From: Eutreptiella sp. 'Long Island Sound 2002'
Taxonomy: Eukaryota; Protista; Euglenida
Assembly (NCBI GenBank): GCA_964036045.1
Contig: OZ038378.1
Coordinates: forward strand, 190,154,001 to 190,218,000
Length of the DNA: 64,000 nt
Direction of reading: 5' to 3'
How positions within the stretch are numbered: the stretch's first letter is position 1; the number at the start of each line of letters is the position of its first letter. A model generated the notes under the pieces. It ran no database searches. It had not been told where the DNA came from and saw only the letters and a list, made by a program, of their open reading frames with translations. Below, one piece after another: positions 1 to 49,116 of the stretch. Position numbers and translations under genes: made by a program.

Positions 1-342
1 CTGCCGCTCGTCGCCATGAGGTGTATGGACGACTCTCACGGCATGCAACTCTAGCACGTCCGGGTGCATCAGGACTTCAAGGGTATGGTCACGGATGGTG
101 TAGATCTTGGGTTGGTCCTGCCCGTCCACGGGGCTCTCCGCGGTCGCTCCTTCCTTCTTGCCATGTCCCGTACCCACATGTACTTCCCTTGGCAGGGCGC
201 TCCAGGGGTTGGGAGTGGCGAAACTCAGTGGTATTGGCTCTTCTGGAGCCTTCTTCGGCACCCGATGTGCCTTCGCTTTCTCAGGGATTCCACTGATTTT
301 CGGAGGAGAGACCTCCGAGGTCCCACTCCCGTGGGGGCTCCT
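1..342 (-). CDS. Putative N-terminal part of pol (pre-protease region) of an LTR retrotransposon, in frame after the gag TAG; runs off the window
   Basis: Manual translation: after TAG (345-343) the same frame stays open for 114 codons to base 1 (RSPHGSGTSEVSPPKISG...HAVRVVHTPHGDERQ). No protease D(T/S)G motif is inside the window, so pol identity is inferred from position only. Confidence 0.5.
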
Positions 343-3300
343 CTAGACTTGGCTTCCCGCAGCCCCTTCCGGCTGCGATCCGCCAGGACTTTGTCCACCA
401 CGTTGCTGGGCCCTGAGTTCCTCCAACGTCCTCAACATGTCCTCAGCAACTTCCTCGATCGACCTCACTCGTCGGTCTTGGCCAGGTCCACCACCATAGC
501 CTCTTCCTCCGCCTTTTCCTTGGCCTTTGCCTTGGCCTTTTCCCCCGTCTCCGCCCTTCGCCTTCCAGTCGGAAATCCGCTGCTCTTTGGGCTTCTTCTC
601 GGGGTGGGCTGCGAAGTAGGCCTTCTTGTCCGCCTCATACACCTTGCACTGACGATGGTCGTGTGCATGGTTGTTTCCCTTGCCATAACAGACCCAGCAC
701 CCGTCGTGCTGAGACCTGTACTGCCGGAACGAGAGCGGTGGGTTCCCGATCCTCCTTGGCTCTTTGCCCTTCTTGGGTCCCACCTGGCTCCATCTGGACC
801 GATCCTGCCCATGGTTCTTCACGTTGTGCGCCACAAACGCGAAGAAATGGTCCTCCTCGTGATCCTCTCGGGACCAGTGGTCTTGGCCACTTCCACTACC
901 ATCCTCCGCAGAGTTGGCCGTGTCCTCCTGGATCTCCCGTTGATGGCGGTCTTCTCGGTGTCCTCGTTGTCCATGACCGTGTCGATCCTGCACGTGGGCC
1001 TCGTTCTTCGCATTGAGCTTCAACTGCACCGTGATGTACTTCACGATCTCGTCCAGGCTCATGCGGGCGAAGATGACCTGCATCCTCAGCGGCTCCCCGC
1101 GCCTCCACTCCACGTTGTTGAGGCGCAGCAACCTTTGCCCCATGGAGTCTCCGAATACCTCCACGTACACGGCGTTCTTCAGGCCCAACATCCGGTTGGG
1201 TTCGCCCAGGTTCCTCCTGAAGAACTCCATGATACCCGCATGGGTATCCTCCGCCGCCATAATCCGCACCGCCACCCGCTTCTTGGCGCGCTTCTTCTCC
1301 TCGTCCTCCACTCGTCGCTTCCAGTTGCCGGGGAGGACCCTCCTTCAGCAAGTGGCGGATCTCACTGGCCTCGTTCCAGTCTTCCACCAACTTGAGGCAT
1401 CTGCGGTACTTCCGCAGATACCGGTTCCACTCCCGGACCCGCAACTCACCGCGGTCCAGCGGCAGTGGAATGGACCACAGGTCCTCCAGCTTTTGGTTAG
1501 GAGCGTCCACCCGCTCCTCATCCTCCAACCACTGGAGGCAGGCCTGCTCCGTCCTGATCAGTCCTTCCCGGATCTGATCCCGCAGCTCCTCCTTCAGGTC
1601 CTGCGCCAGGCGGTGTGGGAATGTCCGGCATACCCACTTATCCCGCGGCGCTCCCCGCATCTCGCCGACGACCTCCTCGGCGAAATCCTCCCAATCCAGG
1701 GTGAAGTCATCCAGGTTGGAGGGGTTACCATCGTAGTAGGGGATTTTGATTCCCCTGAGGTCGTCGATCCTGATGGCGTCTCCGACGTCTCCAGCCACCA
1801 CTCCACCGAGACGGATACCACCTGTGGCCGGGGGGTGTGAGTACACTCCCCGTACATCCCTCTCCTCCATGGAGTGCGGTCCAGTTGGGCCTGAACCCAT
1901 GGGGTTTGGAATGCGGGAAGGACTTGCTCCATCGGCCGTCCATATCCCCGTATTGGGGTCCTTCGCCCACAGGTTTCCGCTTGGATGGCCTCGACCATGT
2001 CCGCCGGCGCTTCCCATGGTTCGCCCCTGCATGGTCTGGTTCTGGATCTCCTCTTCCGCATAAACTGCATAGGTAGTCGTACTTGGCGGTAGATCCTGGG
2101 CGGCATGGGACATCTGCACTGTCAGGCTCCTCGGGTCCGTGGCTACGTGCCCTTCCCGCATGGACCCAGCCGGTGCCGTGTGTTCCCCGAGCATTGTGGA
2201 CTCGCTGAATAGGGGAACAAACGGCAACGCACCCGGGTCAACACGCGGAGGCGCGTATGGTGCCTCTGTAGGGCCGCCCATGGGTTTCTCCATGGCGCTC
2301 CTGAGGGTCTTAACCCGCTCCACCAGCTCTACCGCGGCCGGGTTTGCCGGGAGCTCCGGACCCGAGGCGAGGGGCTGTCGCTCCTCTAGCCTTTTCAGGC
2401 GTCCCGACATGTCCTCCACTAAGTGGAGGAGGCTGTCCACCACTTGCTGCTGCTTCTGCAGGGCCAGCTCCAGATTCTCCCGGTACCGGGCCTGATCCGC
2501 TCGCAGCTCCTCCATGTGGTTCTCCGCGGCCGACTGGTCGTCCAGTATCCCCGCGACGTCCTCCTCTAGAGCGTCCTTGGCGTTGTCCAGGCGGTCAAGA
2601 TGACGCACGATGGCGTCCATCCCCATCTTCGGGTACTTGCCCATGAGGAAGGACACGTGCTCACAGTGGCAGGCAGCGTGCTTTCCGCCGGATTCAGCGC
2701 ATCCCGCGGTTCCCGGCACATCAGACTCATCACCCATAGGCGTATCGCCTATGGCGTCCGTCTCTGGTCCCGTGTGCCGGGGCACAGGTGCCGTCCGGGC
2801 CCTGGCTGGCCTCTCCAAGCCCTCGGCGTCGTGCTGCAGGGCGGGCTCGGGGGCCGTATGCGCCCTGGCGATCGGCGCGGACATCTCCGGCTCCGAAGGT
2901 GGCTCGTAGGCTGTCCGATAGCCCTCGGAGTGCCCCTCGGATTCCCACAGCCTGACCGGGCTGGGGTCCGTGTCCATAGCCCCGGCGTCCCTTGCCGCGG
3001 ACTTGGGTGACCCGCGCTTCCGGTAGCGCCGGGCCCGTCCTCCACTGCTGCCTGAATGGCAAGCCTCATCCGAGTCCTCCGCGGCGGAGCGGAGGTTGCA
3101 TGCTTTACGGCAGCGACGCTCACACATGGAGACCAGGTCCTCCATGTCACGTCCTCCTCTTCCCGACTGTCGTACTTCTCTTCGGGCTTCAACTTCCGGA
3201 GTTCGCCATGCTCTTGAACGTCTCCGCTCTTCTATGGCTCCAATCTCCGGCGTGGTCTCCACCGAGTCCACAATACGCACCCGGGGCGTACTTGGGCAGG

Positions 3301-3451
3301 GCTCATAAGGGCCCAAGTCCCCGGGTCGGCGGTTGGTAGGGGCAGCAGGTAAGCCTCTGCTACCATAAAGAAGGTCCCTACCAGGACCGGCCCCCGCTGT
3401 GCCCCTTCCGCCTGTCACCCCTGCTGACTTGCTCCGGATCAACGATTGCAT
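343..3451 (-). mobile_element. gag: Gag-like ORF, copy 1 (~1035 codons once one +1 frameshift at ~1338-1340 is corrected)
   Basis: ORFs 896..3451 and 343..1311 join at GAGGGTC, where copy 2 reads GACGTC (one extra base in copy 1). Motifs: coiled coil (LDRLDNAKDALEE...LKRLEE), IKIPYYDGNPSNLDDF.LDWEDF (Ty3/retrotransposon capsid-like), and CWVC...HAHDHRQC knuckle at 646-699. Lies directly downstream of LTR-A and the PBS. Confidence 0.8.
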
Positions 3452-3902
3452 TTCTCAAAATCCTCAAAATCCAGGGTCCAAATCCAAAAATATAGAAAAT
3501 GTAATCCTCCTTCAACCCTGAACAGCAACCAGATCCCACAAGTATAGCAATAACCCAATTCACAATCCAAATCAGGCTGCGGGCTTTCGTTCAGCACACC
3601 GGTATTCCCACGGTGGCGGGCATGTACAAGAATTGCACCAAGGAAGAAAGCCCTGAAATTGGCATATGAACACAAATAAAGCAAAGTTGGGGAAAGAGGT
3701 AAACATGCACATTCACAGCCATAAACCCATCATTCCCTGGACTCAAGACCTTCCCTTGACTCACCAACATATTACCCTGAACCAGGTCAAATGATATGGC
3801 TGAATGCCATGTGTCACAAGTCAATACACAAACCCCAAAAATGTGTTCACTCCCAAGCCTCTAAATCCTAGCCCAATAGGGGAGGTGGCGTGTCATGGCC
3901 TA

Positions 3903-3920
3903 GAGTGGCACTCAGGACCA
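3903..3920 (-). promoter_or_regulatory. Primer-binding site candidate
   Basis: TGGTCCTGAGTGCCACTC abuts the CA end of LTR-A (...TAGGGCA|TGG...). Confidence 0.6.
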
Positions 3921-5730
3921 TGCCCTACCCTGACATGTACTTGGTTGGACTTGGAGTCGAATGGGCTTGGAGAAATGACCTATGAGTTTGAACTCATAAC
4001 ATGCCAAAAAACTGCCAATTCACACCATATTGGCCATATATCACATATATGCTCAAAATTGAAGTTACCACTTATCCGAAGGCTCCAAGCATGCATGGAA
4101 TCGAAGTCTAGTATTCATGGAGGATATAGACCAAAGGTCAATGCCCATGTACATCCCCACTTTACCCTCGAAACCCCTTCGGATATGGGCGCCACGCACT
4201 GCCCAAGTCAGCCCATGATCTTGAGACCAATTTTTATAATCCTTCGTGCGCCAAGCCAAATGGAGTACGCGATCCGGCATATGGTGGTGTTCAACTCCAA
4301 AGCATATGCCAACATATGAACAACATACCATGGTTCGAATCTCCATAGGCTTCTTGTTGTAGGCTGACCAGGTGAGTACACAAAACGCAAAAATGAGCAA
4401 AAATTGAGGTCAAAAACATGAAAATATGACCAAATACAAAGTTGTCATGATAGTATATCTCTATGCTCACCCATGGTATCCGCTCATGATTCAATACACA
4501 AATGATTGGAACCATTTGCGAACAATTCCCCCACTTGGATCCCCAATCAGGCGCATGGAGATACCTTCGCCACTAATATCTACATGCCCCATGAAAATGG
4601 GAGTGCACCCATGGATCTCTTTGTCAAACATACCATGAGCAATACATACGCGGTAGACTTGGTCTAGCGCTTTGAATTCCCCAATTGGGACATGGGCAAA
4701 GCCCTCGTCACGTATGGCTCCCCATCTCTTCGGCCACACGAAGATATATAACATGGGCGTGAGCATATCAAACATATACCATGCATACAACACATACCCT
4801 CAAAATGTGGCTCCCACCATGATATGCCATGTCCCTCCATTGACATAACTTCACGTTAAAAATACGTAGGAACCCAAGGAAAGTTGCTATGCAACCCCAA
4901 CACTCATGCGATACACTCGAAAGTCACAATAAAATGTTCGGTTGCACGGTCCAAGAGTTATATATCACTTTATACCCTCTTGACCATTATCCCTTGCAAC
5001 ACCGGGCATGTGTACGTACCAAAGGCGTTTGATGCTTCCTAAATTAAGTTGAGACCAAGGCAGTTCCAACCCAACCTTCCTTATTCTCTTTCCTCACACT
5101 CGCGCGTAGATATGGCTCTTCAAAGTGGTCCCACGATTCGCTTTTGTTTCCCTTATATCTCCAAGTCAAATGGGTGGCAAGTATAAGGGAAACCTGATTC
5201 GGGTATAGGGAAAGGAGTATGACCAATCGACGAAGTCCAAATCAAGTGCGGCGATGTCGAAGTCGAAAATCCGATTTCGAAATCGCGAAAAATTCTGATT
5301 AAAATTTCGAGTGCTTATTTAGAGAATTGCGGAAGCAACGAACCCTTCGCTGATGAAATCTGACCCTTCAACGGAATATCCGCCAAAATATCTGGAAATA
5401 ACAGTTAACCAATCGGTTAACGCAAAATCGCGAGCCAACTGACAGTCGCCGATACATTGACTATCAGAACGGAAGGCTGAAAAATTACGGAAACATAATG
5501 ATAATAAAACCCTGTTGATTCCTGATATTCCGATATATAAATCTCCGCTGGCGGCGCCTCGGTACTGAATATTGCCGCTCATAGCCGCAATGACCAAACC
5601 TATCACACTATCACATCGGGTTAGGTCAGGTGGATGGGAGAGTATGATACCAGCCCATGGCGGCTTGCCGGCACATAGATACACACCTCAAGTGACCCCA
5701 AGATGGCCACGGGGGTCCGAACCGGCTTCA
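3921..5730 (-). mobile_element. LTR-A, 1810 bp
   Basis: Begins TGAAGCCGGTTCGGACCCCCGTGGCC and ends GGGTAGGGCA (TG...CA). Colinear with 8284-10085; similarity stops at exactly these ends. Confidence 0.85.
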
Positions 5731-5744
5731 CTCTCAGGTGGTCG

Positions 5745-8278
5745 CGGTCCAGAGATCTTGGCCGCTTCCACTCCCTTCCTCCGCGGTGCCGACCGTGTCC
5801 TCCTTGACCTCTCGGTGGTGGCGGTCTTCCTGACGACCTTGATGTCCTTGGCCCTGTCGATCCTGCACGTGGGCCTCGATCTTGGCGTTGAGCTTCAGCT
5901 CCACCGTGATATACTTCACGATCTCGTCCAGGCTCATGCGGGCGAAGATGACCTGCATCCTCAGCGGCTCTCCGCGCCTCCACTCCGCGTTGTTGAGGCG
6001 CATCAGCCTTTGCCCCATGGTGTCGCCGAATACCTCCACGTAGACGGTGTTCTTCAACCCCAACGTTCGGCTGGGCTCGCCGAGGTTTCGCCGGAAGAAG
6101 TCCATTATTCCGGCGTGGGTGTCCTCCGATGCCATGATCCGTACGGCCACGCGCTTCTTTGCTCTCTTCTTTTCCTCGTCCTCCACTCTCCTCTTCCAGT
6201 GGCCGGGGAGGACGTCCTTCAGCAGGTGTCGGATCTCGCTGGACTCGTTCCAGTCCTCCACCAGCTTGAGGCTTCTTCGGTACTTGCGGATGTACCGATT
6301 CCATTCCCGGACCCTCAACTCCCCGCACTCCAGCAGCAGCGGAATGGACCACAAATTCTCCAACTTCTGGTTGGGGGCGTCCACTCGCTCCTCGTCCTCC
6401 AGCCACTGGAGGCAGGCCTGCTCCGTCTGGATCAATCCCTCGCGGATCTAATCCCTGAGCTCCTCCTTCAGGTCCTGCGCCAGCCTGTGTGGGAATGTCC
6501 GACATACCCACTTGTCCCTTGGCGCTACCCTCATCTCGCCGACGACCTCCTCGGCGAAGTCCTCCCAATCCAGGATGAAGTCATCCAGGTTGGAGGGGTT
6601 GCCATCGTAGTAGGGGATTTTGATTCCCCTGAGGTCGTCAATCCTGATGGCATCTCTGACGTCCGCCGCCACCACTCCACCGAGACGGATACCACCTGTG
6701 GCCGGGGGGTGTGAGTACACTCCCGTACATCCCTCTCCTCCATGGAGTGCGGTCCAGTTGGGCCTCAGCCCATGGGGTTTGGGATGCGGGAAGGACTGGC
6801 TCCACCGGCTGTCCATATCCCCGTAGTGGGGTCCTTCACCCACAGGTTTCCGCCTGGATGGCCTCAACCATGTCCGTCGGTCCTTCCCATGGTTCGCCCC
6901 TGCATGGTCTGGATCTGGATCTCCTCTTCCGCATAAACTGCATGGGCAGCCGTAGTGGTCGGTGGATCCTGGGCGGCATGGGACATCTGTACCGTCAGGC
7001 TCCTCAGGTCCGTGGTTGCGTGCTCTTCCGGCATGGACCCAGCTGGTGCCGTATGCTCCCCGAGCATTATGGATTCGCTGAACATGGGAACAAACGGCAG
7101 CGCACCCGGGTCAACACGCGGAGGTGCGTAAGGTGCCTCTGCAGGGCCGCCCATGGGTTTATCCATGGCGCTCCTGAGGGTCTTGACCCGCTCCACCAGC
7201 TCTGCCGTTGCCGGCCTTGCCGAGAGCTCCGGACCCGAGGCGAGGGGTTGTAACTCCTCTAGCCTTTTCAGGCGTCCCAACATGTCCTCCACCAGGTGGA
7301 GGAGGCTGTCCACCACTCGCTGCTGCTTCTGCAGGGCCAGCTCCAGATTCTCCCGGTACCGGTCCTGCTCCGCTCGCAGCTCCGCCATGTCTCTCTCCGC
7401 TTCCGACTGGTCATCCAGGATCCCCGCGACATCCTCCTCTAGGCCGTCCTTCGCGTTGTCCAGGCGGTCGAGGTGCTGCACGATGGCGTCCATCCCCATC
7501 TTTGGATACTTGCCGATGAGGAAGGATACGTGCTCGCAGTGGCACTCAACGTGTTTTCCCCCTGATCCGGCGCATCCCACGGTTCCCGGCGCCTCGGACT
7601 CCTCCGCCATGGGTGTGTCGCCCATGTTATCCCGCTTTGGCTCCGTGTGCCGGGCCACCGGCGCCGTTCTGGCTCTGGTAGGCCTCTCCAACGCCTCGGC
7701 GTCATGCTCCAGGCTGGGTTCTGGGGCCGTGTGCGCCCTTGTGGGCGGTATGGCCATCTCCTCCGACTCCGAAGGGAAAGCGGTCCGATAGCCATCGGAA
7801 TGCCCCTCGGAATCTGCAGCTGACCACAGCCTGACCGGGCTGGGATCCGTCTCCATTGCCCTGGCTTCCGCCGTGGGTTTTGGGGACCTGCGCTTCCGGT
7901 AGCGCCGAGCTCTGCCGTTGCTGCCAGTCTCCTCCAACTCCTCCGCAGCGGAGCGGAGATTGCAAGCCTTGCGGCATTGCCTTTCACACATGGAGGCCAG
8001 GTCCTCCATGTCTAGCCCATGTCCTGCAAGGCTCTCCGTCCTGAGCATCTTTGTTCTTCTCGGGCATCTAAGTCCGGCGTCGACTGCACGGACTCCACGA
8101 TCTGCACGCGGGGCGTCCTTGGGCAGGGCTCATGAGGGCCCAAGTCCCCGGTGCGGCGGTAGGGGGCAGGTACTCCTCTGCTACCATAAAGAAGGTCTCT
8201 ACCAGGACCGGCCCCTGCTGTACCCGTTCCACCATTTCCTGTCACTCCTATGGTCTTGCTTCTCACCAGGTTCTGCAT
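5745..8278 (-). pseudogene. gag: Gag-like ORF, copy 2 (disabled, 3' truncated)
   Basis: ORFs 8012..8278, 6864..8048, 6448..6867 and 5734..6435 are consecutive homologues of copy 1. Two frameshifts, a CAG>TAG nonsense change at 6448-6450, and loss of similarity after GQDLW, before the zinc knuckle. Confidence 0.85.
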
Positions 8279-8283
8279 GATCT

Positions 8284-10085
8284 TGCCCTATCCTGACATA
8301 ACTTTGGTCGGACTTGGAGTCGATTGGGCTTGGAGAACTGCCCCATGAAGATGACCTCACAACATAGCAAAATTAGGCAAATCACACCATATTGCCCGAA
8401 ATTCAATTATATACTCAAAAATGCATACGGCAAATATTCAAATGCTCCATGCATGTGTCAAACCGGAAAGTAATATACAAGGGTGATATAGACCAAAGGT
8501 CCATGCCCAAGAATATGCCATCATTGGCTCCGAAACCCCTCCGGATATACACATGCCATGCTTCACAAGTCAACTCACGAATTTGAGACCTAATTTTGTG
8601 AGGCCTCGTGTGCCACGCCAAAGTGACCACGTGATCCGGCATATGGTGAGGTGCAACACTGAAGCATATGCCAACATATAAGCAACATACCATAGTTCAC
8701 AGATCTCTAGGCACTTTACTGTTAGCCGACCAGTTGAGCACATAAAATACAAAAATGAGCATAAAATGAGGTCAAAAACATGCAAATGATGCCAAATTCA
8801 AAGTAATCACAATAGTATATAACTTCGCTCACCCATGATATCAACATATGGTTCAAAACACAATTGCTTGGGACCATTTGCAAACAATCCCCCCACTTGG
8901 ATCCCCACATGGACGCATGGGGACACCTTCGAACCTCCTCCCAACACGCACCATGAAAATGGGAAAATTGATATTGGCGCTTGTGGGTCGCTCCGTAAAC
9001 CTTCCCACATGCACTATATGTGTGGTAGACATAGTCTAGCGCTATGGAGTTCACCATTGGGACATGGGCGAAGCCCTTGCCACGTATGACTCCACATATC
9101 TTCCTACAAACGGAGATATATAACATGGGCGTGAGCATAGCGAAGCATATACCATGCATATAACACATACCCTCATAAAGTGGCTCCCACCATGGTATGC
9201 CATGCCCCTCCATGGAAATAACTTCACGTTAAAAATACGTAGGAACCCAAGGAAAGTTTCTATGCAACACCAACACTCATGCGGTACACTCGAAAGTCGC
9301 ATTAAAATATTCGGTTGCATGGTTCAAGAGTTATATATCACTTTCTACCCTCTCGACCATTATCCCTTGCTACAACGGGCATATGTACACATCAAAGGCG
9401 TTTGATGCTTCCTAAATTAAGTTGAGACCAAGGCGATTGCAGCCCATATCTCAAAATTGTAACTCCTCGCAGTGAGCCGGAGATATGACCTTTCAAAGTG
9501 GCCCCACAAATCAATTTTGTTTCGCCTATATGTCCAAGAAAAATGAAGGAGACAACAAAAGGATGGTTGATTTGTGATCGGGGAAAAATGTATGACCACT
9601 CGAAATGCATCATATCAAGTGCGGCGACCTCGAAATCAAAAATCCGATTCTGAAAGTCTGAAAAAATCGGATTAATTTTGCGAGTGTATAACATGAAAAT
9701 TGCGGAAGCAACGAACCCTTTTCTGATGAAATTTAACCCTTCATCGGGGTTTCCGCCAAAACATCTGGAAATAACAGTTAACCAATCGGTTACCGCAAAA
9801 TCGCCGATACATTGACAATCAGAACGGATAGCTGATAAATTACGGAAACATTATGATAAAAAAACCCTGTTGATTCCTGATATTCTGATATATAAATCCC
9901 AGCCGGCGGCGCCTCGGTATTGAATATGGCCGCTCATAGCTGGAATGGCCAAGCCTATCACACTATCACATCGGGTTAGGTCAGGTGGATGGGAGAGTAT
10001 GATATCAGCCAATGGCGGCTTGCCTGCACATAGATACACACCCCAAGTGACCCAAAGATGGCCACGGGGGTCCGAACCGGCTCCA
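8284..10085 (-). mobile_element. LTR-B, 1802 bp
   Basis: Begins TGGAGCCGGTTCGGACCCCCGTGGCC and ends GGATAGGGCA. Diverged homologue of LTR-A, preceded by a purine tract. Confidence 0.85.
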
Positions 10086-10096
10086 CCCCCCTTCTC
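10086..10096 (-). promoter_or_regulatory. Polypurine tract candidate
   Basis: GAGAAGGGGGG immediately 5' of the TG start of LTR-B. Confidence 0.6.
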
Positions 10097-10576
10097 AGAG
10101 CGTTGTATCCGCTCGGAAGTCATTGAAGAGAGGACGGGAGGACCCCAATGGGCTCCAACCCCCCCCCCCCATGTCCCAAGGACACATGGAGGCCCCACAT
10201 ACGGCGTAGGCGTCCCCCATGCCCCAAGGGAGGGGTGAGGACACTCGTAATCGGTGCCCTCCGCCATATCCGGTCTCCTCTTGATCTACAACATGGACCA
10301 AGGGGATCAAAGATAGAGAAACGTCGTCGGTCGACCTAAATACGGATACCACAATGAAATATATATGTGGAGACCGAGTGAAGGGGGTATATGGCCAATC
10401 AAGGCCCAAAAATCCCCGGATGAACACCCTCACCCGTCTCCCAAGCACAAAGACAAACATAAATGCCAAGGGGGATCCATTACGGTGCTGTAGCAGCCAC
10501 CAAATGGACCAACACATCCTTGACACGTCCGAACCGGCTTCACCGCCTTGTGTATGCAAGGACTTGTATGTGCACT

Positions 10577-11007
10577 ACCCCCCCCCCCCCTGCGCCTCGT
10601 TAGCGCGCCAATCGCGCCTCGTTAGCGCCAAACCCCCCCCCACGCTCCTCGTTAGCGCCGAACCCCTCCCGCTGGTAACACCGCGCGCCTCGTTTGCAAC
10701 CCCCCTCCCCATGTGCCTCGTTAGCGCTAAACCCCCCCCCCCATGCGCCTCGTTAGCGCCAACCCCCCCCCCCCCCCCCGTGCGCCTCGTTAGCGCCAAA
10801 CTTCCCCCCCCCCCCGTGCGCCTTGTTAGCGCCAAACTCCCCCTCTCCCCGTGTGTCTGGTTAGCGCCAAACTCCCCCCCCCGTGCGCCTCGTTAGCGCC
10901 AACCCCCCCCCCCCCGTGCGCCTTGTTAGCGCCAAACTCGCCCTCTCCCCGTGCGCCTCGCCAGCGCCAAACTCCCCTCCCCCTGTGCGCCTCGTTAAAC
11001 GAGGCGC
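10577..11007. repeat. GC-rich minisatellite, unit about (C)nGTGCGCCTCGTTAGCGCCAAA
   Basis: About a dozen degenerate copies of CGCCTCGTTAGCGCCAA separated by C runs; the array ends in GCGCCTCGTT-A-AACGAGGCGC. Confidence 0.85.
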
Positions 11008-11850
11008 GCAGTCTTGGTCAAACAATGGACATTAAAGGCTCGTACTCACGCCGACGACGATAGAGCCTTAGAGGTGCCACAATTAGGTGAATAACTTCTT
11101 ATTAAGCATACATTTGTTGACACGTATGGATTGCAAACGAGGGGCAGAAACAAAACAAAGAATGCGACACGCACAACCGCAAGGGTTACAGATACATCGT
11201 CACATGCTGCCAAGTTCTGGCTTTGATGTATACAAGAGTGTGTGGCAGAGCATCTGCTTGGTGTAGGCATGAGCAATTCTTCTTGCGCACACCGAAAAAT
11301 TTATGAAGTGGCGCATTGCTGAGTTGGTCAGTTGTTCAAGCGGCTTGATGACGCACCAAAATACTCATGTAACCTCGTGCAGTGCTGCTGGCACCGATGC
11401 AAATGCCCATCAATGCATGCTAGGCAATCTTGTCTGTGCAAGACAACGCAACAAAACACTATGATGATCACGAACACGAATACACCAAATCATAGTGACG
11501 TTTGACAAAATGTTGGGAGTACAGAACACAATACTACAACAATTACATATCCAAATACGATATGAATCTTGCGATGAACGTATCTCAAATTTACAAACAA
11601 TCGCAAATCCTACAAGCGCAATGCATCTGCGACCACTTGCACGCACATGTGCCTGTGACCTCCTGCACATCCTAGGCCATCTAAGATAATGCATCGACTG
11701 TGGCGCAGCGATCCGCCGGAAAATCAGACTTGGGAACACGGGCCATGGCCTCTAATGTACATTTGGGTGTTCCCTTGGACCATTCCTTCAAGGCCATGGC
11801 CCATCTTCTTTCTGTCGGGTTTACCTACAATGTGAGTTGGGTACTGACAC

Positions 11851-12936
11851 GGCATGTAGACGAGATACGTCTAACGGAATAGTAAGAGTATTAAGTCTGG
11901 AACACTCCATATTGTTCCAGAACATGCGAGATTTGTTCCAGAAGACGTGATACATCTACCGGAACAGTGTGATACTTTGCTAGACGTTGTAGAACAGTCT
12001 ATTTTGCTTGAAGGATGTGAAAACCTATACGGGGCGAGTCAAAATCTTGTTTTTAAGAAGTTCCAAATTATTTATAGGGATGCACAGAAGGTGTATGCTC
12101 CAAGAACCACTGCACAGCAACATTGTTTCTTTTTTTCTAGGGCGATACATGAAACGAAATTGAGAGCCAAAAGAACGAATGTTGGTAACCTATGTTAAGC
12201 GACCGGCTGTTTTTTTTTTCTCTTTTGAAAAAAAGTATCGAAAACTTAAACGGCATTTGGAGGCAGTGAATCAAAAAACGATGATACATAGTCATACAAA
12301 CTATTTGCAATCATAGACTGATTGAACTGAATTTAAAAATGTGATATCTTTTTTTAAACAAATGTGGGACCGCTATAAATTTTTTGAAGGTACGAACCGT
12401 TGGAACAGAGAATTGGTCTGAAAGAGTTCAAACATTGTCTCACAAATGACCGCGAGGGATAGAAAGTCCAGACTAGTCTAGTATTTGAAGAAAGAAGAAA
12501 TGATTTAGATAGTGTACAAAAGCTAGTACATAAAAACGGTAGCCCTGCAAGACAGTTGAATAAAGACGTTAAAGATTTCTAAAATGGTATTACAGCAAAG
12601 TTGCTTATGAAATGAAAGGCGAAAGGTAAAAATATGAAAATGTGCAAAACAATTGTGTGGTAGTATACATATATATTATATTATAGATAATATAATAGTA
12701 ATATGTAAGTAATATATAATATAGCATAATGGTGCGTTTAGTGGAATTGTATGTTGCGTCTAACATTTTGCCATAGTGTTGTGACAGATGTATTACGTCT
12801 TTTGGAACAGTATAAACTGTTTTACGGTGTCTAGCAAAGTGTCTTCTAGAACACGTCTCGCGTCTTCTGGAACAGTATGGAGTGTTCCAGACTTAATGGT
12901 CTTATTGTTCCGCTAGAGGTATTTCGTCTACATGCC
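11851..12936. mobile_element. Non-autonomous DNA transposon (MITE-like) with ~100-bp TIRs
   Basis: Left GGCATGTAGACGAGATACGTCTAACGGAATAGTAAGAGTATTAAGTCTGGAACACTCCAT matches the reverse complement of the right end GGCATGTAGACGAAATACCTCTAGCGGAACAATAAGACCATTAAGTCTGGAACACTCCAT. AT-rich, non-coding interior; AC on both flanks. Confidence 0.85.
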
Positions 12937-15555: not shown

Positions 15556-18500
15556 ATGGAAGTCCCGACCCCGGGCACCGATGCCCCGTTAACCGCGCGA
15601 GAGAAGCAGAGGTCGGAGAAGGAGTTGCTTGAAGCGCGAAAGGCCGGAACCATCCCGGCAGAGTTGGATGAAGGTTTGTCCAAGCATTTGGCGAGTGGTA
15701 CGGCAAAGCACGTACGCAGTCCTCTCATGATGCGAAACTCAAACTTCGGGTGAAAATGTCGAGTGTGCGCTCCTCTCGTCTCTCCAGATGGGAAAGAAAT
15801 CAATCCCCATATTCCGCTGTACATGGCCAATGCGCCATGGTATTTGGGTGAGAGAAAACCTGGCTTGAAGCATCAAAAAAGTCAATTCACAAAAGAATAT
15901 GATAAGATGGGCACGTGGTGTGTGACGTGTAGCCTAAGTGTACCCAAAATTCGAAACATGCGCATGATTTTCCCCTTAGCCGGTTATTTACACAATGCAA
16001 TCATGTTTTTTTCTAGCTTCAATTGATGGCGACGTCAGTTTCGTATGCTTTCGTGCAGGTATGCGAGAGGTCAAAAGGCCGGCCCGGCACCCACAAAATT
16101 TCGCAAAGGGGCCTGTGAAAATTGTGGTGCGATGACTCACAAGGCCAAAGATTGCGTTGAAAGGCCACGAAAAACAGGTATGGCGAAAATGCCGCTTCGC
16201 CGAGGAACCCATGCACCGGAATTACATCCGCGTTTAATCGATGTCATACGCACGAACATGCAAACGTGTTTCATTGGGCGGCCAATGACTAAAAGTTCGT
16301 GTCAATTGGGCCCGCTTGACGTGGTGGATTTTGCTTCTTCGCCCCGTCGCATAGCTGCAAAGTATTCGGGCAAAGATCTACAAGCGGATGAGGTGATTGT
16401 GGAATGCAATCTCAACTACTCTGGAAAGCGTGACCGATGGAATGGCTATGACCCTTCTGCGCACAAGAAACATGTTACGGAGTACGAGTTGCAAGAGGCT
16501 GAGAGGAAGGCCGTCAAGGTGTATGATAATTTGTAGCAAGCCCGGTCGCACGCGGTCGACCATGCGCCATCTATCGAAGAAGCCATTTGCTCTGCTTTGC
16601 CATGTGCTCTTCGTAGGCCAAAGAGTTGGAACAAGCAATCAAGACGGGCACAATTTCCTCCGAAGCACTCAACAAAGATGAAGATCTCGAGCAAGAAGTT
16701 ATTGAGGAATCAGAAGAGTATGCCGGGGTTTGCTTGCGTTCTGTACGTAGTCATGGAGACAAGAAGCGGGTGTATCGTTTTTTCAAGTGGGCTTGATTAT
16801 TTCAGTCGGAGGATCCGGCTTGTCGCTTGTTTCACCGTGATGGATCCCCATGCCCCCCGAATGTGCTGGGCGAGCAACGTGTCGAGTGGATGCCCAATCC
16901 TTACCGCCAGACATGAGCTACTGAAGCGCCGCATCATTAGCCAACAACCTCTTGCCCAAGCGTCTTGCCTGTGTCGTACGCTCTTGATTGAGGTATCGCC
17001 GGACTGTATTGATTTTGGTCTGTGAGTTCCATTCCAAGTGTAATGGCCTAGACACCAACGTTGAGTCGTGCTTGGGTGATAAGGGGTGCGCACAGCGGTG
17101 TGCGTTCACGATAGTAGCATATTTGCATGTTGCAAGAAAGTTGGGTCATGGGACGGATGAGGATGGAGACCAAAGTCCAACCCAAGCGTGCTGTTGACAA
17201 GGCCCACCGCGGGTGCGCAAGTTCATGTTCATGGTGTTGGGGGAGGGGGGGGGGATAAGGCCGAGTAAGTGTGTGGTTGGGGCTACAACAATTATCAAAA
17301 ACCTTGCGGCGCTGAACGCACCTGTATTTGCATTGGGCCAATATTGTAGGGCTCGGGGGCAAGCAATTTAGTCCGTGGCTCAAAATCCAATTTCCGGATT
17401 TGCTACCCGGGTCTGCCTTCGAGGTGCAATGAGACCTCCTGTCCAAGCTACGGAGAAATACCAAAATTAATATGGTCCCTCCGCCTACTGTAACTTAGAC
17501 AAGGTCGTGGCTTGCACACAGCACATGGAATGGGAGCTGTTGCAGTGGTGCAAGCAAAGGGTCGGGATCATGCCCACACCCCCTCAAATGAATATTTGTG
17601 GGCACCATTGGGCACACAACAACAATGTCCCTCGGCCCACAAACGTGGCATTATTTGTGTTATGCGGTTGCAGCACACTTGGTACCGAATTACATTAGGT
17701 GCCAAGTGAATACGGTCCGTACGCCCGCTGTAGCTTGGACCAGACCGTAGATTGGACAAGGGAGGGGATGGGGGGGTAGCAACCTTGTTTCCAGCATAGG
17801 CACTTTGGTTTTGAGGAACGCATCTGTGTGTAGACATGATTGTCACATTCCAGGCACAAGATGGCCCGTGGTGCTGGATGTGAGGATGTCCGGACACGAA
17901 CCACAATCCGCAATTTGCGAATTCGCGAGGACACGGCCAAATATCTCCTGAATCTGGACCTCAGTTCGGCTCATTACGATCCAAAGACCCGCAGTATGCG
18001 TGGCAACCCCCACCTTCCGGTATGGGCTTCCTTGTTTGCTTGTATTTTGCTTTGGGTATTCGGGTTGGGTGCGCGGGTGGGTGGGTGGCTGAGCCCTGGC
18101 TGAGGCCCAAAATACCCCCCCCCCCTTCACTTGGGGTCACTAAGCAACGGCCTGGTGGGGAGGGTTAGCCCTAGAGGCAGATGAATGGGCGGGTCTAAAT
18201 GGCTCGGACAATTGCGCTGCTTGATTCCTTGAAACAGATGGTGAAGAGGTGTGAACATTAGGCAAGCGGTGATGGTCGACTTCAGCACCGCTACCCCACA
18301 GTTGTGCATCAACATTGCACAACACCGGGCGCACGGGGGGTGGGGGGGCAGGGACCCCCCCCCCCCTCTACGGACCCCAAAATGGTTGTATGGGTCAATG
18401 GATTATTTTGGCACTGGAGATACTACATACATACATACATACATACATACATACATACATACGGCACGGGGAATTTTTTTGTTTTACCCTATGTGTCTAT

Positions 18501-21500
18501 GCTCAAAATCCTCAGACTTTTGTGGAGAATTCCAAAATGGGTGAAAAACACAAAAAAACTTTGACCGCGACCCCAGCTCCGGGTGGGACCTTGGCTCATG
18601 GGCCTGATCTGAGGGGCAATTTTTTTCTGAAAATTTTTTACCCCAACTGTGTATGTTCAAAATTATCAGCGTGTCATGGGGATCATTTTGAGGTATGTAT
18701 GTTGGGGTACCCCCCTCCCCCTCCCCCCGGGGACCCTGGTGGCTGACCGCCCGACCCTCCTTCCCCCTAGGTTGGGGTCAACGAAGCCCCCCCCCTCCCC
18801 TCATGGGGGGGGGGGAGCCCCCCTACAACCCCTGAAATGGTTCAACACCCTTTGGGGTCCCATCCCACCAGGCAGCCGCCTCCGTGACCGGGCGTTACAT
18901 TCCCAACTACCGAAAGACACAAACCAAACGACCTCGACCAACAAAAGCAGGTCGCACAAAACAAAGCAGTGGACACCGCTTTGTGCCACACAGTCCACTA
19001 ACATTGCTCACCGGCTGTGTGTGTGTTTGTCTGTCTGTGTGTGCGTGCGTGCCTGCGTGCGTGTGTGTTCAGTGTATCTGCTTGGAAAATACCTGTAACA
19101 AAGGTGGTTGTAGATGGACAGAGGAAGGGACAAGAAGTGAATGCACACATGCATCAAGTGAAACATACTACGAGTGAGAAAAAGTACATGCAAGGGATAT
19201 GCACAACAAGTGACAAGATGATCTTGTTTTCTCTTTTGGTGTTGTCCCCTCGAGCCATGTCCAATTGTGCCGTCACGGCCGACGTTTACCCAGTTTGGAT
19301 CTGGGGAGCAGACACTGGACGAGCATACTGCGTGGCGCACATGGCGTGCATGTAGAAACACGCAGACAAACACAGTCATGCTTTTGTCGTGTGAGCAACG
19401 GAAAGTGAGGTTTGGCGTCTGATCCTCTGATCCCTGCAGGCACTGCTCGATGACAGTCTGGGTGTGTACCTCGCTGGGGTTCATTTCTTTGTTTGTGGGC
19501 CGTCCAGCATCTCACTGAAAGGCCCCGTTTTGATTCATTCGCGGTGTGTGCACAATTGAGTCATCTACCAAGGTGTAGGGTCGCCACCCCAATTTTTTTT
19601 TGAGGGTGGGGAATTCGAAAACACAGTTTGTAGAAGCGTTTGAGATTGGTTTGGGTAGGCATCGGTCTCCACAAGGGGTCGGGAAGGGCTAGCAATGGGT
19701 CATGACATCACTGCTGAAAGGATCCTGACCCCAAAAGGACCCCACCTGATTTGCCCCCCAAAAGTGCAATTTCCACACTAATAATGAAGGATAATGAGCA
19801 ATAAACTCGAAATATTTTCTGTTGTGGGTGTGCATGGTGCTCGGAAGGGATTTGTTCAGGGGAAAGCAATCGTTTTGGTACTCTTGTCAGGATCCTGTCA
19901 GCAGTGATGTCATATCCTATTGTTCGCCTTTCCCATCCTTGTTGGGGGATAACACCCGACCCAAAATTTCTAAACCGGGGTTTTTTTTTTAAGTTTCCCA
20001 CCCCCAAAATAGCGGGGAGGGTCCTCCTACACCCAGCGAAACCACACCTGGTGAGCTAAGGTGTCCATACATTACATATTTATTGGTGAATATTTTTCTC
20101 GCTGGTTTGGCGCTGATGGTGCCAGCTAGTGAAAACAGATAAACACCACGTGTTCTACAATGGGTAATAGGTAGTTAGGAAGAGCAGCACTGGTGTAGGT
20201 ATTCGCAGTAGCAGAAGCAGTAGTACGAACAGCAGAGGATTAGGACTCGGAGCAGGAGCAGTAACAGCAAAGCAGCCTCAGTAGGAGCAAGAGCAGCACA
20301 AGCAGCAGCAGCAGCAGGAAGAGGAGGAGGAGGAGGGGGAGAGATATTAGTAGGCAGTAGCAGCAGCAGCATCATCAGCAGCAGGAGGCCGCGGCGTCAG
20401 CGGTAACAGCAGTGGAGGAGGAGGGCGGCGGCAGGGGGAGCAGGCGGCGATGGCAGCCGACGAGGCAGAGGTGGAGGCAAAGGAGGAGGAGATGGCGGAG
20501 GAAGAGGGGGAGGAGGAGGGCATGCCTTTGCATTTGTTGTAGTGGTGGTGGTGGTGGTGGTGGTGGTGGCGGCGGCGGTGGTAGGGCACACCCCTGTGTT
20601 CTTTATTCCGTATGCTGCATTCTGCAACGTCCGACCCAACATCCGCACTGACCGCCGCAGGACCAGCGAGATGACAAGCTCTACCATGGGGACAACGCGT
20701 TGCGCAACAGTGGGAATGCTTTGGATGTGGTGCAGATGCAGGTCTTCTGCTGGGATGCCAACGACAAAGGCACAGAAGTGCATTTACAAGGAGCCCCGTC
20801 ACACGCTGAAGCGATGTACAACAATTTCAAAGGTTTGATTGTCAACAGAAGACGCTGTGGCATTGCCCTCTTTCCTATTCTCGGATGTGTGCCGGTGATC
20901 TTTGGGCACCGGAACCCCTTTGTGACAGTTGATGGTCAGCTGGTGGCATTTCGTGGCATGCGATTCACAAGTGCATTGGTCAACCAAAAGCGTCTAGCGG
21001 TGAGTGTGGCTTTTGCTTTCTGCGCTTTGGTTAAAGAACCAAGTATTTTTCCTTCTGAGGTACACTCTGAACGTGTGCAATGGATCTGAATTCCGCCCTC
21101 AGGTTGTGTGTCCACAAATGTGAGACCAAGCACGTTGCAAAAGCACGTATCATTGCCTACCACACCCAAATTATATGACAAAGCTGCCACAGCACGTTAA
21201 CCAAAATTGGCCCGGTTGTTTGGTAAGGGGGGGCAAAAACAGGCACGGGTGGGGAATGGTAAAAAAAAAAAGATGCCCGGTGCACGTCTGGCGCACTAAC
21301 ACTCCCCGACTTCTCCTCTGCCGTATATTTTTTAAATCGCTTGTTGGGCGTTGGGTTCAGCCTTTGGCCGTTACATACCGGCCAAGACGAAAGGCAGTCT
21401 CGTTACTGTGGCACGTTGGGATGTCAAATTTTCCGCAGCGCCCTCCCCCCCCCCCGTGTTATCAAGACAGCACGTGGTCCAAACCAACAACACGTCGTAG

Positions 21501-48930: not shown

Positions 48931-48961
<31 letters not shown>

Positions 48962-49116
48962 GAAGAGATCGTGACAGGGACAGGGACAGGGATAGGGACA
49001 GGGACAGGGATAGGGACAGGGATCGAGAACGGGACCGGGGTGGGGACAAGGATAGGGAAAAGGACAAGGACAAAGACAAGGATCGGAGCCGGGAGCGGGA
49101 AAGGGAATCACGATAG
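40652..49116 (+). CDS. RRM + RS/RD-repeat protein (SR-like, SRSF11/SREK1-type architecture), 288 aa
   Basis: Exons 40652-40800, 42063-42150, 43721-43946, 48713-49116 (867 nt, phases match). RNP2-like TVHIGNL and RNP1-like RYGFVEF; the RRM ends STAIK|VSQAR; the C-terminus is RS then a long RD dipeptide tract. Intron 1 needs a GC donor. Optional 18-nt exon at 41863-41880. Confidence 0.88.
42530..42833. mobile_element. PIF/Harbinger (Tourist-like) MITE, copy 2
   Basis: TIR GGGGGTGT...ACGCCCCC, CTA on both flanks; near-identical to 26205-26519. Confidence 0.85.
43435..43655 (+). mobile_element. Short LINE 3' fragment bounded on both sides by CACAC-type arrays
   Basis: Encodes [18 protein letters not shown], homologous to [18 protein letters not shown] in the 27.9 kb copy; ends TGGTAACAGCGCCTTCAGCACACCACAG. 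Confidence 0.75.
44975..45520 (-). mobile_element. Composite retroposon copy: 47-bp VNTR + LINE 3' end + (CACAC)n
   Basis: (TGTGG)n at 44975-44997, LINE-homologous ~230 nt, then about six VNTR units from ~45228. Confidence 0.65.
46029..46216. repeat. (TGTGG)n microsatellite
   Basis: Near-perfect pentamer array of about 37 units. Confidence 0.97.
46924..48555 (-). mobile_element. Composite retroposon copy: 47-bp VNTR (~24 units) + LINE 3' end, bounded by (TGTGG)n on both sides
   Basis: (TGTGG)n at 46924-47052, LINE-homologous ~47053-47320, VNTR ~47340-48457 (measured periods 46-48 nt), degenerate (TGTGG)n at 48458-48555. Confidence 0.7.

What the first reader, a model, noticed from the sequence alone, without database searches (positions are those of the whole stretch)
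1072..1275. RRM-like domain apparently inserted inside the capsid region of an LTR-retrotransposon Gag
Seen: both gag copies carry VAVRIM-x4-THAGIMEFFRRNLG-EPNRMLGL-KNAVYVEVFGDSMGQRLLRLNNVEWRRGEPLRMQVI. Knowledge: this pattern fits the beta-alpha-beta-beta-alpha-beta RRM template, with AVYVEV in the RNP1 position and LRLNN...GEPLRMQV matching the usual AL.LNG..L.GRPLRV ending. It sits between SEIRHLLKDVLPGHWKRRV and RMSLDEIVKYI, which resemble the last two helices of a Ty3/gypsy capsid C-terminal domain. RRMs are typical of non-LTR ORF1 proteins (coiled coil-RRM), not LTR Gags. Inference: a hybrid ~1035-aa Gag combining coiled coil, capsid, RRM and zinc knuckle, possibly defining an undescribed retroelement lineage.
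Basis: partly seen in the sequence, partly recalled or inferred. Interest (0 to 1): 0.82.

Follow-up and report, generated by a model that had tools for sequence, protein, structure and literature searches.

The report
RRM-fold domain in a gypsy Gag
A family of Ty3/gypsy-type jumping genes carries a small, conserved domain with the shape of an RNA-recognition motif at the end of its capsid region, an unusual but not unprecedented addition to a retrotransposon coat protein.

Summary
Window 1072-1275 (-) and 5947-6150 (-) encode the quoted 68-aa segment in two copies of one gag. An intact relative (L001) shows the element is an LTR retrotransposon: 2.36-kb LTRs, gag, then PR-RT-RNaseH-integrase-chromodomain pol.

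- **Conservation:** the segment is kept in three gag lineages only 25-35% identical. It evolves as slowly as the capsid-like part (dN/dS 0.09 vs 0.11).
- **Fold:** a domain-only AlphaFold2 model (core pLDDT about 80) gives exactly the predicted beta-alpha-beta-beta-alpha-beta order. Foldseek then returns almost only RRM domains (E 4e-3 to 3e-2, probability 0.97-1.0, about 3 A).
- **Not a canonical RRM:** no RRM, PNMA_N or other profile matches, and the RNP aromatic residues are not conserved. It is RRM-like in fold only.
- **Capsid flanks:** homology is only weakly supported (sub-threshold Retrotrans_gag and SCAN hits, helix count, gene position). "Inserted before the last capsid helix" is therefore favoured, not proven.
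- **Precedent:** the premise that LTR Gags lack RRMs is outdated. PNMA and related Ty3/mdg4 Gags have an N-terminal RRM-like domain.

I rate this a new architectural variant of a known kind, of moderate interest. The host organism is unknown.

The parts
1072..1275 (-). RRM-fold segment, copy 1 (68 aa; equals P0020 residues 625-692)
   Evidence: Translation. AF2 strands and helices. RRM structural neighbours.
5947..6150 (-). RRM-fold segment, copy 2 (older subfamily, about 85% nt identity to L001)
   Evidence: dN/dS 0.09 against L001.
1276..1311 (-). Conserved charged/basic helix (EDEEKKRAKKR) running straight into beta1. E, K, R, A, K are nearly invariant across the family.
   Evidence: Invariant columns. 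Helix 12-28 of the model.
994..1071 (-). Conserved I-[PF]-A-R-M-[ST]-x-D linker and long helix after the segment. It is a candidate last capsid C-terminal-domain helix, or an alpha3 of the RRM-like domain.
   Evidence: The helix has pLDDT 76-79 when modelled with the capsid-like region and 53-57 when modelled alone.
1343..1753 (-). Capsid-like all-helical region of copy 1 (P0020 466-602), from the YDG..L..F motif to SEIRHLLK. The frame is lost near 1340.
   Evidence: Eight helices in the AF2 model. Retrotrans_gag E=0.14 in kin P0349, in the matching register. SCAN E=2.4. Frameshift.
646..699 (-). Zinc-knuckle-like motif C-x2-C-x8-H-x4-C. The spacing is conserved in distant lineages. No Pfam zf-CCHC match.
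343..3451 (-). gag of copy 1, read as two ORFs (896-3451 and 343-1311) because of one frameshift near 1340. It is 96% identical to the intact gag of L001.
2375..2599 (-). Probable coiled-coil stretch in the N-terminal half of Gag
   Evidence: Only weak matches to coiled-coil proteins and families: EzrA; DUF2937, Flagellar_rod and DUF1664. Not modelled.
3366..5730 (-). 5' LTR of copy 1 (2.36 kb). The first ATG of the long gag ORF lies inside it.
   Evidence: blastn against both LTRs of L001.
1..342 (-). Start of pol of copy 1, in the same frame as gag after a single stop codon. The rest of pol lies off the window.
5749..8048 (-). gag of copy 2 (pieces 5734-6435, 6448-6867, 6864-8048). It is cut off at about residue 758, before the zinc knuckle, where the LTR of copy 1 begins (nested insertion).
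8284..10525 (-). LTR of copy 2, plus about 440 nt that match the 3' internal end of the element

Best explanation
The segment is a genuine, ancient domain of about 70 aa with an RRM-like (ferredoxin-like beta-alpha-beta-beta-alpha-beta) fold. It is built into the Gag of a highly amplified family of chromodomain-bearing Ty3/gypsy LTR retrotransposons. It sits at the C-terminal end of the capsid-like helical region, most likely in the loop before the last helix of the capsid C-terminal domain. Downstream come a disordered linker and a C-x2-C-x8-H-x4-C knuckle.

Shown here:
- the identity of the element;
- conservation of the segment and purifying selection on it;
- the predicted fold and its RRM structural neighbours.

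Inferred:
- The C-terminal face of Ty3/Arc/PNMA-type capsid domains points into the particle towards the nucleocapsid. The domain and its invariant basic helix would therefore lie on the inner capsid surface.
- There it would act as an accessory nucleic-acid-binding or assembly module next to the zinc knuckle.
- It lacks conserved RNP aromatic residues, so any RNA contact would be non-canonical (basic helix, alpha-helical face or alpha3), as in pseudo-RRMs and xRRMs.
For: Element:
- L001 has 2356-bp LTRs that are 99.1% identical.
- It encodes gag P0020 followed by a 1661-aa pol with PR, RVT_1, RNaseH, integrase and chromodomain.

Domain is real:
- It is present in about 400-1300 paralogues per subfamily.
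- It is present in three lineages 25-35% identical.
- dN/dS is 0.09, against 0.11 for the capsid-like part and 0.29 for the disordered tail.

Fold:
- The AF2 domain model has pLDDT 74-87 over residues 31-90, with strands 29-35, 57-60, 64-70, 85-96 and helices 38-52, 72-80.
- About 36 of the 46 listed Foldseek PDB hits are RRMs, including Mex67, RBM23, CBP20, DbpA RBD, SYNCRIP, NONO/PSPC1/SFPQ, U1A, RBM7 and ALYREF. They have E 4e-3 to 3e-2, probability 0.97-1.0 and rmsd 2.8-4.9 A over 70-100 columns.

Position inside the capsid:
- Retrotrans_gag profile positions 17-92/97 align to the stretch ending about 30 residues before the segment.
- There are 4+4 helices before the segment and one after it, which matches a 4+5-helix bilobar Ty3/Arc capsid. 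That comparison rests on my own knowledge.
- The helix after the segment is more confident when the capsid-like region is in the model.

Precedent: RRM-like domains occur in other Ty3/mdg4 Gags (PMC10516033, PMC10945824).
Against: - No Foldseek hit reaches E<=1e-3.
- The model is of medium confidence, and its alignment is dominated by two clusters.
- No RRM-clan profile matches in the correct register.
- RNP1/RNP2 aromatic residues are absent in the distant lineages.
- Capsid homology of the flanks is sub-threshold everywhere.
- The weak SCAN alignment suggests a different register, in which the capsid C-terminal domain ends before the segment.
- Function is pure inference; nothing here measures RNA binding.
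Confidence: 0.6

Rival explanations
1. The RRM-like domain is appended, not inserted. The capsid C-terminal domain is complete upstream (ending near VEDWNEA). The segment, with its own C-terminal alpha3 helix, forms a separate module in the capsid-nucleocapsid spacer, giving the order CA - RRM-like - linker - knuckle.
For: - The weak SCAN-domain alignment covers P0020 526-595 up to the last SCAN helix.
- The I-[PF]-A-R-M-[ST]-x-D linker between beta4 and the following helix is nearly invariant, which suggests the helix belongs with the domain.
- xRRM-type domains carry such an alpha3; PMC10516033 reports PNMA RBD matches to the p65 xRRM.
Against: - The SCAN hit is not significant (E=2.4).
- It leaves only three helices for the N-terminal capsid lobe.
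- The Retrotrans_gag register in P0349 and the usual gypsy Gag motif order (my own knowledge) predict at least two more capsid helices after residue about 590.
- The post-segment helix is less confident when modelled with the domain alone.
Confidence: 0.3
2. The fold resemblance has no functional meaning. The segment is a generic ferredoxin-like alpha/beta elaboration of the capsid, used for protein-protein contacts (lattice or maturation switch) and not for RNA; or the AF2 model is partly wrong.
For: - No RRM profile hit.
- RNP aromatic residues are not conserved.
- Foldseek E-values are only 4e-3 or weaker.
Against: - The top structural neighbours are overwhelmingly RRMs rather than other ferredoxin-like families.
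- The secondary-structure order and the beta-hairpin before beta4 fit an RRM.
- An invariant basic helix abuts beta1.
- The domain sits next to the nucleocapsid-like region.
Confidence: 0.25
3. The segment is a recent capture of a host gene fragment, or an assembly or annotation chimera limited to these copies.
For: None found. One family member (P0041) is a chimeric gene model at its C-terminus, showing that such artefacts exist in the source.
Against: - The segment is present in every family member that spans the region, including lineages 25-35% identical and a degenerate third lineage.
- It is under purifying selection equal to the capsid-like part.
- It is identical in register in the window and in independent contigs.
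Confidence: 0.02

Closest known systems
PNMA family and related vertebrate Ty3/mdg4 Gags (Gypsy-12_DR, Gypsy-30, turtle Ty3/mdg4): RBD - capsid - nucleocapsid (PMC10516033; PMC10945824)
   Same: A Metaviridae-type Gag that carries an extra RRM-like fold of about 70-100 aa. It is recognisable only by structure prediction and fold search, and it accompanies a capsid and (in some) a zinc knuckle.
   Different: - There the domain is N-terminal to the capsid; in PNMA2 particles it is attributed to spikes on the outside. Here it lies at the C-terminal end of the capsid-like region, next to the knuckle.
- No PNMA_N or other profile match.
- The position argues for an independent acquisition, though common origin was not tested directly.
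Non-LTR (LINE-1 type) ORF1p: coiled coil - RRM - CTD
   Same: A retroelement nucleic-acid chaperone or coat protein that combines a coiled coil and an RRM-fold domain.
   Different: - This gene lies between LTRs and is followed by PR-RT-RNaseH-integrase-chromodomain.
- About 370 residues, including a roughly 160-aa capsid-like helical region, separate the putative coiled coil from the RRM-like domain.
- No sequence similarity was detected.
Ty3 Gag / Arc / Retrotrans_gag (PF03732) bilobar capsid
   Same: - Position in the element.
- An all-helical region with 4+4(+1) helices.
- The YDG..L..F start motif and the esV.eY...F-like stretch (my own knowledge).
- A sub-threshold Retrotrans_gag match in the right register.
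- Copia capsid and Arc CTD among the top, non-significant fold hits.
   Different: No significant sequence or fold match. An alpha/beta domain of about 85 aa interrupts or follows the C-terminal lobe.
Chromoviruses (chromodomain-containing Ty3/gypsy elements)
   Same: The pol order is PR-RT-RNaseH-integrase with a C-terminal chromodomain (Chromo also recorded for L002 and L004).
   Different: - The Chromo score in L001 is just under Pfam's cut-off (24.7 against 25.1 bits).
- About 470 aa without any family match lie between PR and RT.
- The Gag is unusually long (934-1036 aa).

Membership tests
Canonical RRM (Pfam RRM_1 / RNP-type RNA recognition motif) | beta1-alpha1-beta2-beta3-alpha2-beta4 fold with a four-stranded sheet | tested here: met
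   AF2 domain model with core pLDDT about 80. Foldseek neighbours are mostly RRMs, with probability 0.97-1.0 and E 4e-3 to 3e-2. This is a prediction of medium confidence, not a solved structure.
Canonical RRM (Pfam RRM_1 / RNP-type RNA recognition motif) | Significant match to an RRM-clan sequence profile | tested here: not met
   - No RRM family at E<=10.
- A recurrent sub-threshold BRAP2 hit (11 of 82 members, best E 0.0058) aligns beta4-alpha3 to the start of that profile. It is out of register and comes from near-identical members.
- The PDB profile search found no RRM.
Canonical RRM (Pfam RRM_1 / RNP-type RNA recognition motif) | Conserved RNP2 (beta1) and RNP1 (beta3) aromatic residues | tested here: not met
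   In the window's subfamily beta3 reads AVYVEVF (Y and F present). The distant lineage has ALLITVT. Beta1 has no aromatic residue in any lineage.
Canonical RRM (Pfam RRM_1 / RNP-type RNA recognition motif) | Binds single-stranded RNA | not testable with these tools
   Needs biochemistry.
Ty3/gypsy (Metaviridae) LTR retrotransposon | Long terminal repeats flanking the internal region | tested here: met
   L001 7425-9780 and 18266-20621 are 99.1% identical. Window 3366-5730 matches both.
Ty3/gypsy (Metaviridae) LTR retrotransposon | pol order PR-RT-RNaseH-integrase | tested here: met
   Pfam on L001:12887-17872 gives PR 101-193 (sub-threshold), RVT_1 673-840, RNaseH 913-1048, and integrase 1198-1383 (Integrase_H2C2 27.9 bits above its cut-off; rve 29.5 bits just under its 32.6 cut-off).
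Ty3/gypsy (Metaviridae) LTR retrotransposon | Gag with a retroviral-type bilobar capsid domain | tested here: inconclusive
   Only sub-threshold hits: Retrotrans_gag E=0.14, SCAN E=2.4, and Copia/Arc capsid Foldseek E 1.6-6 on a model of pLDDT 60. BFVD gave nothing.
Chromovirus clade of Ty3/gypsy | Chromodomain at the C-terminus of integrase | tested here: inconclusive
   Chromo scores 24.7 bits against a cut-off of 25.1 in L001. Precomputed Chromo hits exist for the pol genes of L002 and L004. No phylogeny was made.
PNMA-type RBD-capsid-nucleocapsid Gag | RRM-like RBD N-terminal to the capsid, matching the PNMA N-terminal profile | tested here: not met
   The domain lies C-terminal to the capsid-like region. 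No PNMA family hit appeared in any Pfam scan.
Non-LTR ORF1p (coiled coil-RRM-CTD) | Encoded upstream of an endonuclease-RT ORF2 in an element without LTRs | tested here: not met
   The gene lies within LTRs and upstream of a PR-RT-RNaseH-integrase pol.

The most novel reading that the evidence does not exclude
An RRM-fold module was acquired independently of the PNMA-type N-terminal RBD and of LINE ORF1p. It was inserted into the loop before the last helix of a Ty3/gypsy capsid C-terminal domain. Every capsid subunit would then display an extra, non-canonical RNA-binding surface on the inside of the particle, next to an atypical C-x2-C-x8-H-x4-C knuckle. That would be a third, convergent solution for coupling an RRM to a retroelement coat protein, and a natural example of a domain insertion tolerated within a retroviral-type capsid lattice.
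Probability: 0.35. Interest if true: 0.65.

Novelty: new variant of a known kind. Interest (0 to 1): 0.48.

Why it matters
Gag architecture in Metaviridae is turning out to be more modular than the textbook matrix-capsid-nucleocapsid scheme. An RRM-like domain N-terminal to the capsid was described only recently, and its role is unknown.

A second, differently placed RRM-fold domain would show that retroelement coat proteins recruit this fold repeatedly. Here it is under strong purifying selection in a recently active, highly amplified family (99% identical LTRs, hundreds of intact copies).

It would also give a tractable system for two questions:
- what such a domain does in packaging or assembly;
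- whether a retroviral-type capsid lattice tolerates an inserted domain, which is relevant to engineering Gag-derived delivery particles.

Tried and rejected
Searches that found nothing useful:
- Pfam on all gag pieces, on intact paralogues and on 32+82 family members gave no significant family.
- PDB sequence searches with single sequences and with two family profiles gave no capsid or RRM. The best hits (HoxX, Cas5, eS12) are non-significant.
- The CA+RRM model of 281 aa had pLDDT 60.6. Foldseek against PDB and BFVD gave nothing significant.
- A first large MAFFT alignment of untrimmed fragments (A2) was misaligned and discarded.
- Looking for the domain elsewhere failed. Pattern scans of JGI metagenomes and IMG/VR with the domain alignment, with P0308 and with the RT-RNaseH of L001 found only P0308's own contig.

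Host identification failed:
- ten long ORFs of the window had no Pfam family;
- Rfam found only one marginal tRNA, which ARAGORN did not confirm;
- no dinoflagellate spliced-leader relic was found;
- no paper mentions the sample accessions.

Rejected reading: the recurrent BRAP2 hit was considered as sequence support for an RRM and rejected, because it is out of register and not independent.

A natural intact paralogue (P0020, L001) and the intact ORF of copy 2 were used by reference instead.
Full report
**1. What is in the window**

On the minus strand the window holds two copies of one gag gene.

- Copy 1 is read as two ORFs, 896-3451 and 343-1311, because the frame is lost near 1340.
- Copy 2 is in pieces: 6864-8048, 6448-6867 and 5734-6435.
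The second copy of the segment is at 5947-6150.
- In copy 2 the ORF 5734-6435 runs uninterrupted from the capsid-like flank through the segment and the following helix.
- I did not take the window for human sequence; the host is unknown.

**2. The element**

- A word search with the capsid-like part found 510 related proteins, nearly all listed from ENA. They include a 934-aa intact form (P0020) that represents an 881-member cluster.
- P0020's contig (L001) shows 2356-bp direct repeats that are 99.1% identical, at 7425-9780 and 18266-20621. Between them lie gag (10001-12805; the ORF from the first ATG is 1036 aa) and a 1661-aa pol.
- The pol carries an aspartic protease, RVT_1, RNase H, an integrase zinc-binding and core domain, and a C-terminal chromodomain.
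- The gene is therefore the Gag of a Ty3/gypsy, chromovirus-like LTR retrotransposon.
- Window 1-5730 is 95.5% identical to L001 13147-7425, covering the start of pol, gag and the 5' LTR.
- Copy 2 belongs to an older subfamily (about 85% identity). Its gag is cut at about residue 758, where the LTR of copy 1 begins, so this is a nested insertion.

**3. Is the segment a real domain?**

- The exhaustive representative search with P0020 450-730 gave 225 hits. Among them are proteins only 25-35% identical that align across the whole query, segment included.
- One of these, P0286, belongs to a second, equally abundant gypsy family in the same assembly (1300 hits).
- A third, degenerate lineage in L004 also carries the segment, split over three frames.
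- One relative comes from a different data set, a JGI metagenome.
- No family member that spans the region lacks the segment.
- The hydrophobic pattern of every predicted strand and helix is kept across the three groups. Nearly invariant positions include the EEKKRAK helix before beta1, the G after beta3, RL at the end of alpha2, and the I-x-A-x-M-x-x-D linker after beta4.
- Between copy 2 and L001, dN/dS is 0.09 for the segment, 0.11 for the capsid-like part, 0.07 for the following helix and 0.29 for the low-complexity tail.

The segment is thus an old, selected part of this Gag, not a recent capture or an artefact.

**4. Fold**

- No sequence method recognises the segment. Pfam gave nothing significant on pieces, on whole proteins or on 114 family members. 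PDB sequence and profile searches gave no RRM and no capsid.
- A 281-aa AF2 model of capsid-like region plus segment was poor: mean pLDDT 60.6, with the second half of the segment below 50.
- A domain-only model (P0020 596-730, 82-sequence alignment A5) was better. pLDDT is 74-87 over residues 31-90. The elements are beta1 29-35, alpha1 38-52, beta2 57-60, beta3 64-70, alpha2 72-80 and a hairpin plus beta4 at 85-96, followed by a less confident helix 103-124.
- Foldseek against the PDB returned about 36 RRM domains among the 46 listed hits: Mex67, RBM23, CBP20, the DbpA RNA-binding domain, SYNCRIP, NONO/PSPC1/SFPQ, U1A, RBM7, ALYREF and La. They have E 4e-3 to 3e-2, probability 0.97-1.0 and rmsd 2.8-4.9 A over 70-100 columns. 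No hit reaches E<=1e-3.
- I conclude the segment very probably has an RRM-like, ferredoxin-like fold.
- It is not a canonical RRM. No RRM-clan profile matches in register, beta1 has no aromatic residue, and the Y and F of beta3 are replaced by L and T in the distant lineage.
- A recurrent weak BRAP2 match (11 of 82 members) aligns beta4 and the following helix to the start of that profile, and it comes from near-identical sequences. I do not count it as support.

**5. Are the flanks capsid, and is the domain inserted?**

The evidence is indirect.

- The region upstream (P0020 about 466-621) is predicted as eight helices.
- The most divergent relative, P0349, gives Retrotrans_gag as its only Pfam hit (E=0.14, profile 17-92 of 97). 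In the family alignment that stretch ends about 30 residues before the segment.
- The 851-aa ORF gives a SCAN domain, a capsid C-terminal-domain derivative, as one of only two PDB hits (E=2.4).
- Each hit is insignificant alone, but random weak hits would rarely fall on capsid families. With the gene's position, I accept the region as capsid-like.

The two weak alignments disagree on register.

- The Retrotrans_gag register, the usual gypsy Gag motif order (sde..l..F..GL.p.i...v, then tl.ea...A..E; my own knowledge) and the 4+4+1 helix count all place the segment before the last C-terminal-domain helix.
- The SCAN register would end the capsid before the segment.
- The helix after the segment is more confident when modelled with the capsid-like region (pLDDT 76-79) than with the domain alone (53-57). 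This is a weak hint for 'inserted'.
- Overall, 'inserted' (about 0.55-0.6) is favoured over 'appended between capsid and nucleocapsid' (about 0.3).

**6. Rest of the architecture**

- Downstream come a low-complexity, His/Arg/Asp-rich stretch and a conserved FFAFVAHN-like motif.
- Then comes a C-x2-C-x8-H-x4-C motif whose spacing is conserved in distant lineages. It does not match Pfam zf-CCHC.
- Upstream, residues about 180-258 of P0020 match only coiled-coil proteins, weakly. The coiled coil is plausible but was not modelled.

**7. Comparison with what is known**

An RRM-like RNA-binding domain N-terminal to the capsid is described for the PNMA genes and for active vertebrate Ty3/mdg4 elements (PMC10516033). 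In PNMA2 capsids it is assigned to external spikes (PMC10945824).
- What differs here is the position, at the C-terminal end of the capsid next to the knuckle. There is also no detectable similarity to PNMA_N.
- The element is not a LINE-like hybrid. Its pol and LTRs are ordinary gypsy features.
- The gag family itself has no named relative in the lists I saw (sources ENA and JGI only). It is an undescribed gag family, but of a known kind of element.

**8. Mechanism (inferred)**

- In Ty3/Arc/PNMA-type particles the C-terminal end of the capsid domain points inward, towards the nucleocapsid (my own knowledge; consistent with PMC10945824).
- A domain at that position would line the inner surface.
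- Together with the invariant basic helix, it could help bind or organise the RNA, or control assembly. Binding would be through a non-canonical surface, because the RNP aromatic residues are not conserved.
- A purely structural role in protein contacts is the main functional rival.

**9. Limits**

- All structure evidence is prediction, and I could not inspect coordinates or PAE.
- The alignment depth is modest and clustered.
- The host is unidentified.
Natural intact sequences were used by reference instead.

Noticed in passing
L001:12737-12961; window 1-345 (-): gag and pol are in the same reading frame, separated by a single stop codon with no further stop. This suggests pol is expressed by stop-codon readthrough rather than by frameshifting.
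   Followed up: partly
L001:12887-17872 (pol residues about 200-670): About 470 residues between the protease and the reverse transcriptase match no Pfam family. This is an unusually long unexplained stretch in a gypsy pol.
   Followed up: no
window 3366-3451 (-); L001 9695-9780: The first ATG of the long gag ORF (1036 aa) lies about 86 nt inside the 5' LTR. Gene callers start 102 codons later, giving the 934-aa product. The true start is undetermined.
   Followed up: no
window 5731-5749 and 8284-10525: Copy 1 is nested in the gag of an older copy. Upstream of the older copy's LTR, about 440 nt match the 3' internal end of the element. This suggests a tandem LTR-internal-LTR arrangement or a subfamily with a longer LTR.
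   Followed up: partly
window 646-699 (-): The zinc-knuckle-like motif has C-x2-C-x8-H-x4-C spacing instead of the usual C-x2-C-x4-H-x4-C. The spacing is conserved in lineages about 30% identical, and Pfam zf-CCHC does not recognise it.
   Followed up: partly
window 45250-49130: A dense block of tandem arrays with periods of 10, 12/18 and 47 nt, showing strong positive GC skew (0.21-0.26).
   Followed up: no
window 26203-26496 and 42528-42821: A 294-nt direct repeat, 98% identical, 16.3 kb apart. These may be the LTRs or ends of another mobile element.
   Followed up: no
P0041 (family member, C-terminal about 190 aa): A chimeric gene model. The gag is fused after the post-segment helix to a reverse-transcriptase-like tail (an FIDD motif) with a precomputed PF26215 hit. 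It probably reflects another element inserted into that copy.
   Followed up: no
L002 5211-7967: In the second lineage (P0286 type) the capsid-like region starts at residue 12 of its ORF. Two further ORFs of 492 and 414 aa without family matches lie just upstream. The N-terminal part of that Gag is either split or organised differently.
   Followed up: no
window 60165-60238 (+): Rfam reports a tRNA just at the gathering score (29.5 against 29 bits). ARAGORN finds no tRNA there.
   Followed up: partly
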